DNA from: Macrostomum lignano
Lineage: Eukaryota
DNA: 64,000 bases
Reading direction: 5' to 3'
NCBI GenBank assembly: GCA_002269645.1
Contig: NIVC01003939.1
Location: 1-64,000 of the forward strand
The translations under genes were made by a program, and so were the position numbers. Below the pieces are notes generated by a model, which saw nothing but the letters and a program-made list of their open reading frames with translations, had not been told where the DNA came from and ran no database searches. Below, one piece after another: positions 49,905 through 59,004 of the stretch. The number at the start of each line of letters is the position of its first letter. The stretch's first letter is position 1.

Positions 49905-52900
49905 CTACACTCGAACCCAGCTCTTGCCAACTGAGTAGTATATTGCGCCCAGTTTAGCAGGCTCAACGCCCATTCGATAGGCCAATAGAATGAGTGCATT
50001 GAGTCCGCACACGGCCAGGAATCCGTGGGTGATCCAGCGCCTCGGCGACGTCATCACGGCGGCATCCGCGATGGCCACGTGACCGAATTGTTTCACCCGT
50101 TCGGCGAATTCGATGTCCTCGAGAAAGGGCCAGTCACGGTAGCCGCCAGACATGGTGTAGTAGTAGGCGTGAATGAACAGACCCTGCGGGTAGAGCGGGT
50201 GGCAAGTCATACCGGTACTACAGATGCATTTAAACAGCCTTACTCGGTTGCTGGGCCAGCCTCCCAGATTCTGTTGCTGGGCCAGCCTCCCAGATTCTTT
50301 GTTGCTGGGCCAGCCTCCCAGATTCTCTGTTGCTGGGCCAGCCTCCCAGATTCGGTTGCTGGGCCAGCCTCCCAGATTCTTTGTTGCTGGGCCAGCCTCC
50401 CAGATTCTCTGTTGCTGGGCCAGCCTCCCAGATCCTCAGTTGCTGGGCCAGCCTCCCAGATTCTCTGTTGCTGGGCCAGCCTCCCAGATCCTCAGTTGCT
50501 GGGCCACCAGGCTCCCAGATCCTCAGTTGCTGGGCCAGCCTCCTGGATCGTCAGTTGCTGGGCCAGCCTCCCAAATCCTCCTGGTTTCTGGGTTAACCTC
50601 TCAGATTACCGGCCGCTCACCTGACTGCCAATAGGCATCTCGTACCGCCTGCACCTCCAATTAGTGTGCAGCTCCAGCAGCAGGGTTCTCAAAGCCCACG
50701 GTATGTCCTTAGTGAAGCACAGCTCGTTAGGCAGCTTCAAATGAAAGGTGAACGCCCCGGCAACAATACCGGGCTTGCTCAGCGAGTGCACGATGACGTC
50801 ATCCCAGTTCTCAGGCAGCGAGCTGTCGGCATGCAGCACCAGATAGTAGGCGCCGCGGGCGAATTGAAGGCCGTAGCGAATCATTTGCCCGCGGCCGGTC
50901 GGCAGACTGTCAGGCAGGCGGCGCACCTCGATGCTGACTTTGTGCAGCTGGGCTCGCGCCAAACAGGTGCTTGCCCGGTGGCGTACGAACTCGCGAATCA
51001 CCTGGGGAATAATGGTAATAGATAAGTCAGATAGAAAGCGATATAAATAATGATAACCGAATGGACTATGATTATGACACAGTAGACTATTATGATGATA
51101 TACTAGACTATGATGATGACCCAATAGACTATTATGATGATCCACTAGACTTTGATGACCCACTAGACTATGATGATGACCCAATAGACTATGATGATGA
51201 CCCAATAGACTATTATGATGATCCACTAGACTTTGATGACCCACTAGACTATGATGATGACCCACTAGACTATGATGATGACCCAATAGACTATTATGAT
51301 GATCCACTAGACTTTGATGACCCACTAGACTATGATGATGACCCAATAGACTATGATGATGACCCAATAGACTATGATGATGACCCAATAGACTATTATG
51401 ATGACCCAATAGACTATGATGATGACCCAATAGACTATGATGATGACCCACTAGACTATGATGGTGACCCACTAGACTATGATGATGACCCACTAGACTA
51501 TGATGATGACCCAATAGACTATGATGATGACCCACTAGACTATGATGATGACCCACTAGACTATGATGGTGACCCACTAGACTATGATGATGACCCAATA
51601 GACTATGATGATGACCCACTAGACTATGGTGATGATCCACTAGACTATGATGATGACCCACCAGACTTTGATGACCCACCAGACTTTGATGACCTACTAG
51701 ACAATGCTGATGACCCACTAGACTTTGATGACCTACTAGACAATGCTGATGACCCACTAGACTTTGATAACCCACTAGACTATGGTGATGACCCAACAGA
51801 CTATGATGATGACCCATTAGACCAATACAAGAAAAAAATTCAAAACATGTTTACAATTTAAAAACTTTTGCCTACTGCATACGCGGGTATTTAACAAACC
51901 TGCACAGTACCATCCACAGATCTGCCATCAACGATAACGATTTGTAGGTGTCGTTTCTTAGAAAAATTAAATAACAAATTCCGCAACGAAGCCTCAATAT
52001 GATCGGCCTCGTTTCGAGCAGGAATGAGCACGGTCACGGTGTCGCTCATGAACAGGCAGCTAGGGATGCCCAGCTCTGTCTCAACCAGGCCCAAATCGTC
52101 AATCGTGTCAAGATCGCGTAGGATTGGTCGCAGGGAGGCGCAGACGATGTCAAGCAGCAGGGCGTTAGCAAACTGCAAATGGGGAGAGGGAATTTCTGTC
52201 TGTGAGACTGCGTCAAAACGAATGGGGACCTGAGACTGCGGCACCAGCAGTTAATGATCTGGGAGGCTCGCCCAGCAACTGAGGATCTGGGAGGCTGGTG
52301 GCCCAGCAACTGAGGATCTGGGAGGCTGGTGGCCCAGCAACTCAGGATCTGGGAGGCTGGTGGCCCAGCAACTCAGAATCTGGGAGGCTGGTGGCCCAGC
52401 AACTCAAGATCTAGGAGGCTGGTGGCCCAGCAACTGAGGATCTGGGAGGCTGGTGGCCCAGCAACTCAGGATCTGGGAGGCTGGTGGCCCAGCAACTGAG
52501 GATCTGGGAGGCTGGTGGCCCAGCAACTCAGGATCTGGGAGGCTGGTGGCCCAGCAACTCAGGATCTGGGAGGCTGGTGGCCCAGCAACTCAGGATCTGG
52601 GAGGCTGGTGGCCCAGCAACTGAGGATCTGGGAGGCTGGTGGCCCAGCAACTGAGGATCTGGGAGGCTGGTGGCCCAGCAACTCAGGATCTGGGAGGCTG
52701 GTGGCCCAGCAACTCAGGATCTGGGAGGCTGGTGGCCCAGCAACTGAGGATCTGGGAGGCTGGTGGCCCAGCAACTGAGGATCTGGGAGGCTGGTGGCCC
52801 AGCAACTGAGGATCTGGGAGGCTGGGCCAGCATATCGGAAATATTGGAAAAGTGAACAACTGTAGCACACATAATTTAAATCAAAATGGGACAGTCCTGA

Positions 52901-58900: not shown

Positions 58901-59004
58901 ACTCTGACAGCGATGCGAATGGTTTCTATAGCAACTAGCCAGATTAGCAGCGCATAGGTGTGCAGCATGCTGCGCTTTCGTCTGAGCATAGAACCGTGCA
59001 GCAT
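49905..59004 (-). CDS. Fusion of TIGR04282/DUF2064-like and TIGR04283-like (GT2) glycosyltransferases, 6 exons (59004-58221, 55911-55697, 54474-54262, 52172-51900, 51001-50621, 50183-49905), 714 aa
   Basis: N-domain AIVVFTRLPYPGRTKSRL, QSGCTIG, VVLLSSDVP, LVLGKTGSGGLYLL, ILWGSSTV, LRDLDTIDDL; C-domain VTVLIPARNEA, IVDGRSVDGT, GRGQMIRYG, LVLHADSSLP, PIGSQGLF, GGYRDWPFLED, VMTSPRRW. Exon phases add up (2,145 nt); the exon 2 donor GTCATT is weak. Confidence 0.85.
50245..50580. repeat. Inverted-orientation array of the 28-bp CCCAGCAAC family in the last intron of the glycosyltransferase gene
   Basis: GTTGCTGGGCCAGCCTCCCAGAT units. Confidence 0.9.
51060..51825. repeat. 21-bp minisatellite GACTATGATGATGACCCACTA, intron 4 of the glycosyltransferase gene
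   Basis: About 36 copies; reads DYDDDPL on plus and LVGHHHS on minus. Confidence 0.95.
52255..52830. repeat. 31-bp variant of the CCCAGCAAC minisatellite, intron 3 of the glycosyltransferase gene
   Basis: GGGAGGCTGGTGGCCCAGCAACT(G/C)AGGATCT, about 18 copies. Confidence 0.95.
53490..54010. repeat. (GA)n microsatellite / polypurine tract
   Basis: Long AG runs. Confidence 0.95.
54595..55460. repeat. 36-bp minisatellite GAGATTCTAATGATGAGAATCAAGTCTAAGGGAGGA, intron 2 of the glycosyltransferase gene
   Basis: About 24 copies; explains the EILMMRIKSKGG ORF. Confidence 0.95.
55995..58080. repeat. 31-bp minisatellite CATCATCGGATTTAACAACCTTCAGGAAGTA, about 2.1 kb, intron 1 of the glycosyltransferase gene
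   Basis: About 65 head-to-tail copies with no spacers; degenerates toward 58080. Confidence 0.95.

What the first reader, a model, noticed from the sequence alone, without database searches (positions are those of the whole stretch)
49905..59004. Intron-containing animal gene fusing two bacterial-type glycosyltransferases linked to arsenosugar / rSAM-seleno gene clusters
Seen: the DUF2064/TIGR04282-like domain ends (LRDLDTIDDL) and the GT2/TIGR04283-like domain begins (VTVLIPARNEA) within one exon (52172-51900), so the fusion is not a splicing artefact. There is an added hydrophobic N-terminus and an acidic insert; GDQG is changed to GSQG. Established, from memory: TIGR04282 and TIGR04283 are typically adjacent bacterial genes, defined as rSAM/selenodomain-associated transferases and annotated as arsenosugar-biosynthesis glycosyltransferases; they are not part of the standard vertebrate or model-invertebrate gene set. 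Inference: an operon-derived fusion (old horizontal transfer or patchy retention) giving an animal an uncharacterised sugar-transfer pathway, possibly for arsenic or selenium metabolites from an algal diet.
Basis: partly seen in the sequence, partly recalled or inferred. Interest (0 to 1): 0.72.

Follow-up and report, generated by a model that had tools for sequence, protein, structure and literature searches.

The report
Flatworm copy of ancient two-domain transferase
This six-exon flatworm gene is a very divergent copy of an old, uncharacterised animal gene, found from sponges to amphioxus, that joins two bacterial-type sugar-transferase-like domains already fused in many bacteria; its link to arsenic is unproven.

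Summary
On the minus strand, 59004-49905, six GT-AG exons encode a 714-aa protein identical to annotated Macrostomum lignano hypothetical proteins. It has a DUF2064/TIGR04282-like half and a GT2/TIGR04283-like half, and the junction lies inside exon 4.

- **The fusion was not made in this animal.** The same architecture is a single ORF in 47 of 80 bacterial loci examined. It is also annotated in more than 25 animal species: a sponge, echinoderms, hemichordates, amphioxus, molluscs, a brachiopod, nemerteans, an annelid and a priapulid.
- **The gene is old in animals.** Sponge, amphioxus and priapulid share intron positions and phases, so the gene dates to early Metazoa and has been retained patchily.
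- **M. lignano belongs to the eukaryotic clade** (96% NJ bootstrap) but is the outlier. It shares none of the ancestral introns and has five new introns filled with tandem repeats. It also has an extra N-terminal helix, a ~150-aa disordered acidic insert, and Ser in place of two Asp that are more than 99% conserved (D369S, D621S). It scores below both NCBIfam cut-offs.
- **It is still under purifying selection** (dN/dS 0.11 between copies).
- **The arsenosugar link is weak.** It rests on bacterial gene neighbourhood only (an ArsS-like gene in 9 of 80 loci) and is untested in animals.

Verdict: real and moderately interesting. It is a derived variant of a known but uncharacterised family.

The parts
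49905..59004 (-). Whole coding region of the DUF2064-GT2 gene (Mlig000337): six exons, five introns, 714 aa.
   Evidence: gene model, GT-AG at every intron. (100% identical to PAA49238.1/PAA51690.1).
58221..59004 (-). Exon 1 (aa 1-261 plus 1 nt). It encodes the N-terminal helical hairpin (aa 8-35 and 41-71; basic flanks RRKR and RSRR), the DUF2064 N-terminal part (aa 73-154, with TRLPYPGRTKSRL) and the first part of the acidic insert.
   Evidence: hydrophobicity and charge; predicted helices H8-35 and H41-71; 3CGX aligns to aa 73-121.
55781..58542 (-). Lineage-specific insert, aa 155-305, spanning the end of exon 1, intron 1 and the start of exon 2. It is absent from all other animal and bacterial homologues aligned. 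The core is acidic and most of it is predicted disordered.
   Evidence: alignment gap in all 10 other animals; pLDDT below 50 at 180-241, 250-285 and 296-301; charge; pN/pS 0.11 between copies.
55697..55911 (-). Exon 2 (aa 262-333): end of the insert and the QSGCTIGATL...GYDQ part of DUF2064.
54262..54474 (-). Exon 3 (aa 334-404): the DUF2064 core with LLSSDVP (D340 kept, G338S) and SGGLY in place of the near-universal DGGYY. The S369 codon is at 54369-54367.
   Evidence: (D at this column in 99.6% of the others; none of 272 has Ser).
51900..52172 (-). Exon 4 (aa 405-495): end of DUF2064 (LRDLDTIDDL; D424 and D426 kept), the linker, and the start of GT2 (VTVLIPARNEA, VDGRSVDGT). The domain junction lies within this one exon.
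   Evidence: HMM envelopes 308-431 and 451-704.
50621..51001 (-). Exon 5 (aa 496-622): GT2 core with GRGQM, the DXD-like LHAD (H552, D554 kept) and IGSQ in place of YGDQ. The S621 codon is at 50626-50624.
   Evidence: (D at this column in 99.3% of the others; 1 of 274 has Ser).
49905..50183 (-). Exon 6 (aa 623-714 plus stop): GT2 C-terminal part (LEDIEF, GHV, TSPRRW, IYYS).
55912..58220 (-). Intron 1 (phase 1, inside the insert), mostly a 31-bp x 66 minisatellite.
54475..55696 (-). Intron 2 (phase 0, after CAG), with a 36-bp x 24 minisatellite. It lies 3 codons from an ancestral animal intron position but not at it.
52173..54261 (-). Intron 3 (phase 0, after CAG), with a 31-bp x 18.5 minisatellite and an (AG)n tract. 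The position is not used in sponge, amphioxus or priapulid.
51002..51899 (-). Intron 4 (phase 0, after CAG), with a 21-bp x 38 minisatellite. A novel position.
50184..50620 (-). Intron 5 (phase 0, after CAG), with a 28-bp x 13 minisatellite. A novel position, 7 codons from an ancestral phase-1 intron.

Best explanation
This is the Macrostomum lignano member of an ancient, vertically inherited animal gene family. It is one of three near-identical syntenic copies. The family encodes a membrane-anchored protein with two GT-A-fold modules: an N-terminal DUF2064 module, related to CofC/FbiD/MobA-type nucleotidyltransferases, and a C-terminal family-2 glycosyltransferase. The two modules were already fused, in this order, in many bacteria, so the eukaryotic lineage inherited or acquired the gene as a fusion.

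Shown: the domain identities, the fold, the bacterial fusions, the wide animal distribution, the intron conservation among other animals, the eukaryotic affinity of the flatworm protein, and purifying selection.

Inferred: the protein sits on a membrane with its catalytic part facing the cytosol. There the DUF2064 module binds or activates a phosphorylated sugar-like substrate with a nucleotide, using the retained three-Asp metal site. The GT2 module then transfers the activated group to a small-molecule or lipid acceptor.

The M. lignano lineage has remodelled the gene. All ancestral introns are gone and five new repeat-filled introns are present. A second N-terminal helix and a disordered acidic insert were added. 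One near-universal Asp in each module is now Ser. I read this as altered substrate or chemistry rather than decay. The arsenosugar label is inherited from bacterial gene neighbourhoods and is not established for animals.
For: Gene model and identity.
Domains.
Fold: AF2 mean pLDDT 80.4, above 90 across both catalytic modules. Foldseek matches 3CGX (TM 0.75 on the target) and soluble GT2 enzymes such as 6P61 (TM 0.81), as well as tandem GT-A enzymes.
Fusion outside animals: nearly all of the 150 best hits from the exhaustive search align across aa ~310-706 as one stretch. 47 of 80 bacterial loci have a single ORF of at least 400 aa.
Animal distribution. Branchiostoma passes both NCBIfam cut-offs, at 221.5/182 and 174/134 bits.
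Vertical inheritance: all 9 Branchiostoma introns match Sycon in position and phase, and 8 of the 9 match Priapulus.
M. lignano in the eukaryotic clade: NJ bootstrap 79.5% and 96% with named bacteria. At 5 diagnostic columns it has the animal state in 3 and the bacterial state in none.
Animal context and composition.
Selection: 29 synonymous against 10 non-synonymous differences, dN/dS 0.107, p = 7e-11; no non-synonymous change in aa 306-440.
Retained and lost residues: 43 of 50 columns that are at least 95% conserved are kept, including D340, D424, D426, D486, D491, H552, D554 and E644/D645. D369S and D621S are lost.
The three-Asp motif is functionally defined in FbiD (PMC6450877).
Membrane anchor.
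Against: No biochemical function is known for any member of either family; the only solved DUF2064 structure is a structural-genomics entry. The activate-then-transfer scheme is inferred from fold relationships only. The CofC similarity is weak (17-33 bits). The mapping of D340/D424/D426 onto the FbiD motif, and of D621 onto a GT2 catalytic base, is by analogy and was not checked residue by residue in a structure. M. lignano shares no intron with other animals and sits on a long branch, so its exact placement among animals is unresolved. No transcript data could be examined here. Topology is predicted only from hydrophobicity and charge.
Confidence: 0.72

Rival explanations
1. One reading: the gene gives the animal an arsenosugar-type (or selenium-type) sugar-transfer pathway that acts on metabolites from an algal diet. 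It would work downstream of arsenite methylation and an ArsS-type radical SAM step.
For: The best NCBIfam families are the two 'arsenosugar biosynthesis glycosyltransferase' models. In bacteria an ArsS-like radical SAM gene (TIGR04167, 249 bits) lies within 8 kb of the fused or paired genes in 9 of 80 loci, and abuts or overlaps them in L027, L050 and L056. ArsM-like genes occur in 4 of 80. AS3MT is reported in many of the same animal groups, including sponge, amphioxus, oyster, Lingula and sea urchin (PMC5398495).
Against: The family names are context-derived. I found no paper testing either enzyme. About 89% of the bacterial loci show no ArsS-like gene nearby, and other neighbours are as frequent or more so: TVP38-like in 19, fatty-acid-hydroxylase-like in 10. 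No ArsS-, ArsM- or other partner-like sequence lies in the window or in about 200 kb of animal flanks. M. lignano scores below both curated cut-offs and has lost D369 and D621. Whether any animal has ArsS could not be tested with these tools.
Confidence: 0.13
2. Independent, lineage-specific horizontal transfer of an already fused bacterial gene into the Macrostomum lineage, followed by intron gain. On this view it is not an orthologue of the other animal genes.
For: None of the 9-10 ancestral animal intron positions is used. All four introns in the conserved region are phase 0, after CAG and full of repeats, as expected for recent gains. The branch is long, the best hit is only 38% identical, and some bacterial sequences are nearly as close by distance. 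No close flatworm relative was found.
Against: The eukaryotic clan that includes Macrostomum has 96% NJ bootstrap against 37 named bacterial fusions and 79.5% in the larger set. At the diagnostic columns it has 3 animal states and no bacterial state. All of the 13 best non-self hits that could be named are animals, with bit scores of 275-190, above the best sequences of bacterial type at about 186 bits. It has an N-terminal membrane anchor like other animals, which bacteria lack. Codon GC matches neighbouring genes.
Confidence: 0.06
3. The M. lignano protein is a catalytically dead pseudoenzyme, or a gene on its way to decay, that keeps only a binding or scaffolding role.
For: Ser replaces Asp at two columns that are 99.6% and 99.3% Asp among about 270 homologues. 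Five further columns that are at least 95% conserved also differ: A102S, G338S, Y372L, Q535M, F550V. It scores below both curated family cut-offs. It carries a large disordered insert.
Against: The frame is intact in three copies. dN/dS is 0.107, with no non-synonymous change in the DUF2064 C-half, so decay is excluded. 43 of 50 conserved columns are kept, including the presumed metal-binding Asp residues and the DXD-like motif. The fold is predicted with confidence. A pseudoenzyme under selection is not excluded.
Confidence: 0.2
4. Both modules are true glycosyltransferases acting as a dual-activity enzyme that adds two sugars in turn, in the manner of chondroitin polymerase K4CP or LARGE1.
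For: Foldseek's top matches include the tandem GT-A enzymes K4CP (2Z86/2Z87), LH3 and LARGE1, aligned over 440-575 columns. PDB 3CGX is deposited as 'putative nucleotide-diphospho-sugar transferase'.
Against: TM-scores for these long alignments are low (0.2-0.3) with rmsd of about 17 A, so only the domain composition matches. The DUF2064 half has sequence affinity to CofC (PF01983, TIGR03552) and not to any glycosyltransferase family.
Confidence: 0.08
5. Bacterial contamination or an assembly artefact.
For: Both domains are of bacterial type. The contig is repeat-rich.
Against: There are five spliceosomal GT-AG introns and an exact match to the annotated gene model. Three copies sit on different contigs in the same C2 / fusion / CH-DIX gene order, and the flanking genes are animal genes.
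Confidence: 0.01

Closest known systems
Bacterial TIGR04282 (DUF2064) and TIGR04283 (GT2) 'arsenosugar biosynthesis glycosyltransferase' pair, including its single-ORF fused form (for example in Desulfobacterales, Planctomycetes, Verrucomicrobia and cyanobacteria)
   Same: Same two domains in the same order, 30-34% identity over aa ~310-706. The GSD, DxD, NEA, VDG.S.D.T, GRG, HAD and MED/LED motifs are all present.
   Different: The bacterial proteins are about 450 aa, soluble, and have no N-terminal anchor or insert. M. lignano scores below both curated cut-offs and carries D369S and D621S. It is intron-bearing and nuclear, and has no operon partners.
Uncharacterised metazoan DUF2064-GT2 proteins (for example Branchiostoma floridae XP_035676070.1, Sycon ciliatum LOC135814017, Magallana gigas XP_019918188.3, Lytechinus variegatus XP_041458696.1, Priapulus caudatus XP_014677751.1)
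   Same: Same clade, same architecture, an N-terminal hydrophobic anchor, and animal-type residues at diagnostic columns. These are the best hits to the M. lignano protein (28-34% identity in the alignment; 38% to Branchiostoma by phmmer).
   Different: The other animal proteins are 490-550 aa with canonical DGGYY and YGDQ motifs, a single N-terminal helix followed by a K/R-rich stretch, and 9-10 shared introns. M. lignano is 714 aa with the insert, a helical hairpin, none of the shared introns and both Asp changed to Ser.
CofC/FbiD (2-phospho-L-lactate / PEP guanylyltransferase; MobA-like NTP-transferase fold)
   Same: There are weak but consistent HMM hits of the DUF2064 half to CofC (TIGR03552, PF01983). 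A three-Asp arrangement (D340, D424, D426) resembles FbiD's Mg-binding D116/D188/D190 (PMC6450877). The fold is GT-A/MobA-like.
   Different: Scores are far below the family cut-off (17 against 105 bits). There is no F420 pathway context. The residue correspondence is by analogy and was not verified.
PDB 3CGX (Desulfovibrio DUF2064, structural genomics)
   Same: It is the only solved relative of the N-terminal half. The profile E-value is 3e-40 and the Foldseek TM-score is 0.75 on the target.
   Different: It is a single-domain protein with no assigned function. It has QQGLDLGERM and DGGYY where M. lignano has QSGCTIGATL and SGGLY.
Tandem GT-A bifunctional glycosyltransferases (K4CP chondroitin polymerase, LARGE1)
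   Same: Two GT-A-fold modules in one chain.
   Different: No sequence relationship for the first module, and low global TM-scores. The resemblance is in architecture only.

Membership tests
NCBIfam TIGR04283 (GT2, 'arsenosugar biosynthesis glycosyltransferase', equivalog) | Whole-protein score at or above the curated cut-off (182 bits). | tested here: not met
   147.4 bits, although it is the best-scoring family and aligns to positions 2-221 of 221. Branchiostoma scores 221.5 (met) and Sycon 177.2 (just below).
NCBIfam TIGR04283 | Conserved GT2 motifs: NEA, VDGGS.D.T, GRG.Q, LHAD (DXD-like), YGDQ, MED, TS.RRW. | tested here: inconclusive
   NEA, D486, S489, D491, GRG, H552, D554, E644/D645 and S668/R670 are kept. 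YGDQ is IGSQ (D621S, where 99.3% of 274 homologues have D), Q535 is M and G488 is R.
NCBIfam TIGR04282 / Pfam PF09837 (DUF2064) | Score at or above the cut-off. | tested here: inconclusive
   The Pfam gathering score is met (41.9 against 25.8 bits). The NCBIfam cut-off is not met (91.1 against 134 bits), partly because the insert splits the domain.
NCBIfam TIGR04282 / DUF2064 | Conserved motifs: P.PG..K.RL, G.DLG.RM, GSD.P, DGGYY, W(G/S), DVD. | tested here: inconclusive
   P84, G87, K90, R92, Q310, G316, D340, P342, W395, D424 and D426 are kept. DGGYY is SGGLY (D369S, Y372L), GSD is SSD, and DLG.RM is TIG.TL.
Metazoan DUF2064-GT2 orthologue group | Groups with animal/eukaryotic sequences rather than bacterial ones. 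| tested here: met
   NJ bootstrap is 96% for the eukaryotic clan including Macrostomum and 79.5% in the larger set. Diagnostic columns give 3 animal, 0 bacterial and 2 other states. These are NJ trees only; the position within animals is unresolved.
Metazoan DUF2064-GT2 orthologue group | Shared ancestral intron positions and phases (9 shared by sponge and amphioxus). | tested here: not met
   None of the 5 M. lignano introns coincides with one; the nearest are 3 and 7 codons away.
Metazoan DUF2064-GT2 orthologue group | N-terminal hydrophobic membrane anchor ahead of the first domain. | tested here: met
   Hydrophobic helices at aa 18-36 and 44-62, predicted as H8-35 and H41-71. This is a hairpin rather than the single helix plus K/R stretch of other animals. 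It is a prediction only.
Arsenosugar biosynthesis system (ArsM/AS3MT + ArsS + transferases) | An ArsS-type radical SAM enzyme (TIGR04167) in the same genome or neighbourhood. | not testable with these tools
   None in the window or in the flanks of five animal loci. The whole M. lignano genome could not be searched. In bacteria an ArsS-like gene lies within 8 kb in 9 of 80 loci.
Arsenosugar biosynthesis system | Enzyme acts on 5-deoxy-5-dimethylarsinoyl-ribosyl intermediates, and the organism makes arsenosugars. | not testable with these tools
   This needs biochemistry or arsenic speciation. No published test of either transferase family was found.

The most novel reading that the evidence does not exclude
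Many invertebrates, mostly marine, from sponges to amphioxus, and in modified form this flatworm, carry an endogenous, cytosol-facing, membrane-bound enzyme inherited from the early animal lineage. It would conjugate 5-deoxy-5-substituted ribose derivatives, such as dimethylarsinoyl-ribose made downstream of AS3MT. On that reading, part of the arsenosugar and arsenolipid content of marine animals would be made by the animals themselves rather than taken from algae. The paired Asp-to-Ser changes in M. lignano would mark a switch to a different substrate.
Probability: 0.1. Interest if true: 0.8.

Novelty: new variant of a known kind. Interest (0 to 1): 0.5.

Why it matters
The gene belongs to a 'dark' animal gene family. 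It is bacterial in type and present from sponges to cephalochordates with conserved introns. It was not seen among vertebrate, arthropod or nematode hits, and I found no literature on it. Nobody has shown what either domain does, even in bacteria.

M. lignano is a tractable laboratory model with RNAi and transgenesis. Its copy is a natural experiment in which one near-universal Asp in each domain has become Ser while selection is maintained.

If the family does handle arsenic or related ribose derivatives, that would bear on the long-standing question of where organoarsenicals in marine animals come from. If it does not, the NCBI family names are misleading for the eukaryotic members.

The locus is also a clear example of complete intron turnover in a conserved gene.

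Tried and rejected
1. The first word-indexed homologue search, with the full protein, returned only self and one weak hit, because the low-complexity insert saturated the candidate list. This was solved with the exhaustive search and a profile without the insert.
2. A third homologue search, with aa 304-714, looked for close flatworm relatives or transcript-derived contigs. It found none, so transcript support and the age of the D->S changes could not be assessed.
3. The Lingula genomic locus was not on record.
4. Literature searches for DUF2064, TIGR04282/3, 'selenodomain-associated transferase', DUF3641, TIGR04167 and K09931 gave no functional study and nothing on animals.
5. PDB sequence searches align the GT2 half only up to the DXD region, so D621 could not be mapped onto a known catalytic base. 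Foldseek output gives no residue mapping.
6. Introner test: the five introns share no termini or obvious target-site duplications, so there is no evidence for a transposon-borne intron family.
7. tblastn with bacterial ArsS-, ArsM-, TVP38-, hydroxylase- and TIGR04168-like neighbours against the window and the animal loci gave no hits.
8. Compositional test for recent transfer: the CDS GC and GC3 are within the range of neighbouring exons.
9. Contamination and recent-HGT readings were rejected (see rivals).

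
Full report
**What is there**

Three-frame translation of the minus strand between 59100 and 49800 shows six coding pieces. With canonical GT...AG boundaries they join into one open 2145-nt frame. The exons are 59004-58221, 55911-55697, 54474-54262, 52172-51900, 51001-50621 and 50183-49905.

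The 714-aa product is 100% identical, end to end, to GenBank PAA49238.1/PAA51690.1, 'hypothetical protein BOX15_Mlig000337g1/g2' of the flatworm Macrostomum lignano. The window is contig NIVC01003939.1, positions 1-64000, of assembly GCA_002269645.1.

A third copy (PAA81193.1) lies on a 545-kb contig and differs at 10 residues. All three copies sit in the same gene order: a C2-domain gene, this gene, then a CH/DIX gene. The window also carries NUDIX, COA8 and CH-domain exons and transposon remnants. The coding GC (54.5%, GC3 60.6%) is like that of its neighbours. This is a resident animal nuclear gene, not contamination.

**Check of the observation**

| Library | Family | Region (aa) | Score | Cut-off |
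|---|---|---|---|---|
| NCBIfam | TIGR04283 | 451-704 | 147.4 bits | 182 |
| NCBIfam | TIGR04282 | 308-431 | 91.1 bits | 134 |
| Pfam | Glycos_transf_2 | 451-581 | 44.7 bits | 23.3 |
| Pfam | DUF2064 | 307-397 | 41.9 bits | 25.8 |

- The two NCBIfam families are by far the best hits, but both fall below the curated cut-offs. Both Pfam models pass.
- The extra hydrophobic N-terminus, the acidic insert and GSQG in place of GDQG are all real.

**The fusion is neither new nor specific to this animal**

An exhaustive phmmer search of 1.84 billion representatives gave 8828 hits. Nearly all of the 150 best are single proteins of 430-550 aa that align across aa ~310-706, covering both halves in one stretch.

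All of the top ten could be named, and all are animals: amphioxus, the annelid Owenia, Priapulus, scallop, oyster, mussel, sea urchin, Solemya, Lingula and the hemichordate Ptychodera. A profile search added many more:
- the sponge Sycon ciliatum;
- further echinoderms: sea star, brittle star, crinoids and a sea cucumber;
- the nemerteans Lineus and Tubulanus;
- chiton, limpet, abalone, Dreissena and Mya;
- several amphioxus paralogues;
- two diplonemid protists.

None of the 33 hits that outscored the first unnamed metagenomic protein (P0200) was a vertebrate, arthropod, nematode or cnidarian.

Below these come hundreds of proteins of about 450 aa, most from unnamed metagenome contigs; those that carry a name are bacterial, annotated 'TIGR04283 family...' or 'rSAM/selenodomain-associated transferase 2/1'. 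A scan of one genome per prokaryotic species found at least 598 relatives. Of the best 80 loci, 47 have one fused ORF (median 455 aa) and about 25 have two abutting genes in the same order. The eukaryotic gene was most simply acquired already fused.

**Age in animals**

I derived exact exon structures for three species: amphioxus (9 introns), the sponge Sycon (10) and Priapulus (9). All nine amphioxus introns coincide with sponge introns in alignment column and phase (0,0,1,0,0,1,2,1,0). Eight match exactly, and one lies in a gapped stretch. Priapulus shares eight of them.

The gene, with its introns, therefore predates the split between sponges and bilaterians. Its present distribution reflects repeated loss. 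Amphioxus passes both NCBIfam cut-offs and the sponge is borderline.

**Where M. lignano fits**

M. lignano is the outlier.
- None of its five introns uses an ancestral position. The four introns in the conserved region are all phase 0 and follow CAG.
- Every intron is mostly a minisatellite array.
- Even so, NJ trees place it in the eukaryotic clan, with 79.5% bootstrap among 67 sequences and 96% against 37 taxonomically named bacterial fusions.
- Five alignment columns separate animals from bacteria. M. lignano has the animal state in three and the bacterial state in none.
- Its best hits are animal proteins, at 275-190 bits against about 186 bits for the best sequences of bacterial type.

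I conclude that it is a much-modified orthologue. Its position within animals is unresolved because the branch is long. Wholesale loss of the old introns and gain of new ones would fit passage through a processed copy, but that is speculation. An independent transfer remains a minor possibility.

**What changed in the protein**

- Compared with 10 other animal proteins, M. lignano alone has a ~150-aa insert (aa 155-305).
- The insert is predicted disordered (pLDDT about 30) and its core is acidic, with 18 D/E against 3 K/R in aa 186-250.
- Other animal proteins begin with one hydrophobic stretch of about 19 residues followed by a strongly basic stretch (+4 to +8 in most species). By the positive-inside rule this predicts an N-out/C-in anchor with the enzyme in the cytosol.
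- Bacterial and diplonemid proteins lack this anchor. One diplonemid has a C-terminal hydrophobic tail instead.
- M. lignano has two helices (8-35 and 41-71) flanked by RRKR and RSRR. That suggests a hairpin that would still leave the enzyme cytosolic. These topologies are inferred.

Among 274 other fused homologues, 50 columns are at least 95% conserved. M. lignano keeps 43 of them, including D340, D424, D426, D486, D491, H552, D554 and E644/D645. It differs at A102S, G338S, D369S, Y372L, Q535M, F550V and D621S. The columns of D369 (DGGYY) and D621 (YGDQ) are 99.6% and 99.3% Asp, one in each domain.

**Is it functional?**

The window copy and the third copy differ by 29 synonymous and 10 non-synonymous changes. 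That gives dN/dS 0.107, with p = 7e-11 against neutrality. There are no non-synonymous changes in aa 306-440, and the insert itself has pN/pS 0.11.

AlphaFold2, run with a 42-sequence alignment, gives a mean pLDDT of 80.4, above 90 across both catalytic modules. The gene is maintained by selection. Whether the enzyme chemistry is retained, altered or lost cannot be decided here.

**How it probably works**

Foldseek finds two GT-A-fold modules. The first matches the DUF2064 structure 3CGX, with a TM-score of 0.75 on the target. The second matches soluble GT2 enzymes: 6P61 with a TM-score of 0.81, then WrtF, TarP and PcManGT. Tandem GT-A enzymes such as K4CP and LARGE1 match in architecture only.

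The DUF2064 half has weak but recurrent similarity to CofC/FbiD. In FbiD, three Asp residues hold two Mg2+ ions and the substrate phosphate (PMC6450877). D340, D424 and D426 have a comparable arrangement and are retained.

My working model, which is inferred, has two steps. Module 1 binds or nucleotidyl-activates a phosphorylated sugar-like substrate. Module 2 then transfers it to a small or lipid acceptor at a membrane surface. The DGG motif lies where FbiD contacts the variable part of its substrate. So D369S, together with D621S, may mean a changed substrate rather than a dead enzyme.

**The arsenic question**

I clustered the neighbours in the 80 bacterial loci and named the commonest clusters with NCBIfam.

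| Neighbour within 8 kb | Loci (of 80) | Note |
|---|---|---|
| TVP38-like membrane protein | 19 | my own reading of the sequence; no NCBIfam match |
| OlsE-like fatty-acid hydroxylase | 10 | |
| ArsS-like radical SAM (TIGR04167, 249 bits) | 9 | directly abutting or overlapping in three loci |
| TIGR04168 phosphoesterase | 7 | cyanobacteria |
| ArsM-like methyltransferase | 4 | |

The ArsS link is real but applies to a minority of loci. The mix of neighbours hints at membrane or lipid chemistry.

No study of either transferase was found. AS3MT is reported in many of the same animal groups (PMC5398495), but also in vertebrates, which were not seen to have this gene. No partner gene lies in the window or in the animal flanks I held. 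I could not search whole animal genomes for ArsS. The arsenosugar reading is therefore a lead with low probability, and the selenium reading is only an echo of an old family name.

**Verdict**

The feature is real and correctly described. The 'fusion formed in an animal' and 'arsenic/selenium pathway' parts of the interpretation are not supported. 'Patchy retention of an old gene' is supported.

The family is known as sequence models and database entries, but it is uncharacterised. The animal clade, and especially the flatworm form, is a new variant of it. Interest is moderate.

Noticed in passing
window 50184-50620, 51002-51899, 52173-54261, 54475-55696, 55912-58220: Each of the five introns consists largely of a minisatellite array: 28 bp x 13, 21 bp x 38, 31 bp x 18.5 plus (AG)n, 36 bp x 24, and 31 bp x 66. 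Exon spacing differs among the three gene copies, probably because repeat copy number varies.
   Followed up: partly
window 22639-23494, 26356-27058, 48770-49227, 50243-50607, 52256-52825: One ~28-31-bp unit (ATCTGGGAGGCTGGCCCAGCAACTGAGG) recurs as separate arrays across the window. It is present in introns 3 and 5 of the gene, in opposite orientations, and just downstream of it, so it is a dispersed minisatellite family. The intron ends share no termini, so there is no evidence that it delivered the introns.
   Followed up: partly
window 27560-30039 (also 32337-33155, 30917-31630): Long G-rich tandem arrays, for example a 44-bp unit x 58, explain the extreme GC skew (0.89) at 28-30 kb. The window holds more than 20 distinct minisatellite arrays in all.
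   Followed up: partly
window 15698-17782 (+): An uninterrupted 695-aa ORF with a DNA_pol_B_2 domain (protein-primed, viral/organellar-type polymerase). It is probably part of a Polinton/Maverick-type or similar element. A neighbouring 244-aa ORF at 14748-15479 has no Pfam hit.
   Followed up: partly
window 3200-4310 (-): Reverse-transcriptase-like ORF fragments (RVT_1, weak), probably a degraded non-LTR retroelement.
   Followed up: partly
window 7833-8330 (-), 10827-11321 (-), 46981-47925 (-): Exons of ordinary animal genes: a NUDIX hydrolase, COA8 (cytochrome c oxidase assembly factor 8) and the CH domain of the CH/DIX (Dixin-like) neighbour.
   Followed up: partly
L004 (Branchiostoma), L008 (Sycon), L009 (Priapulus): Intron positions and phases of the orthologous gene are conserved between a sponge, a cephalochordate and a priapulid: 9 of 9 and 8 of 9 shared. 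This is an unusually clean case for a gene of bacterial type. Branchiostoma has at least three or four paralogues (P0004, P0188, P0193, P0198).
   Followed up: yes
P0213 (Flectonema neradi) and P0042 (Diplonema ambulator), EukProt transcriptomes: Diplonemid protists have the same fused protein and group with the animals. Flectonema carries a C-terminal hydrophobic tail instead of the animal N-terminal anchor, which suggests independent solutions to membrane attachment. Contamination of the transcriptomes was not excluded.
   Followed up: partly
L038 3769-9323; L027, L050, L056: Some bacteria have a same-strand cluster in the order hydroxylase-like, ArsS-like, TVP38-like (two genes), DUF2064-GT2. 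In L027, L050 and L056 the ArsS-like gene and the fusion abut or overlap. TVP38-like proteins are the commonest neighbour (19 of 80 loci) and are not explained by the arsenosugar scheme.
   Followed up: partly
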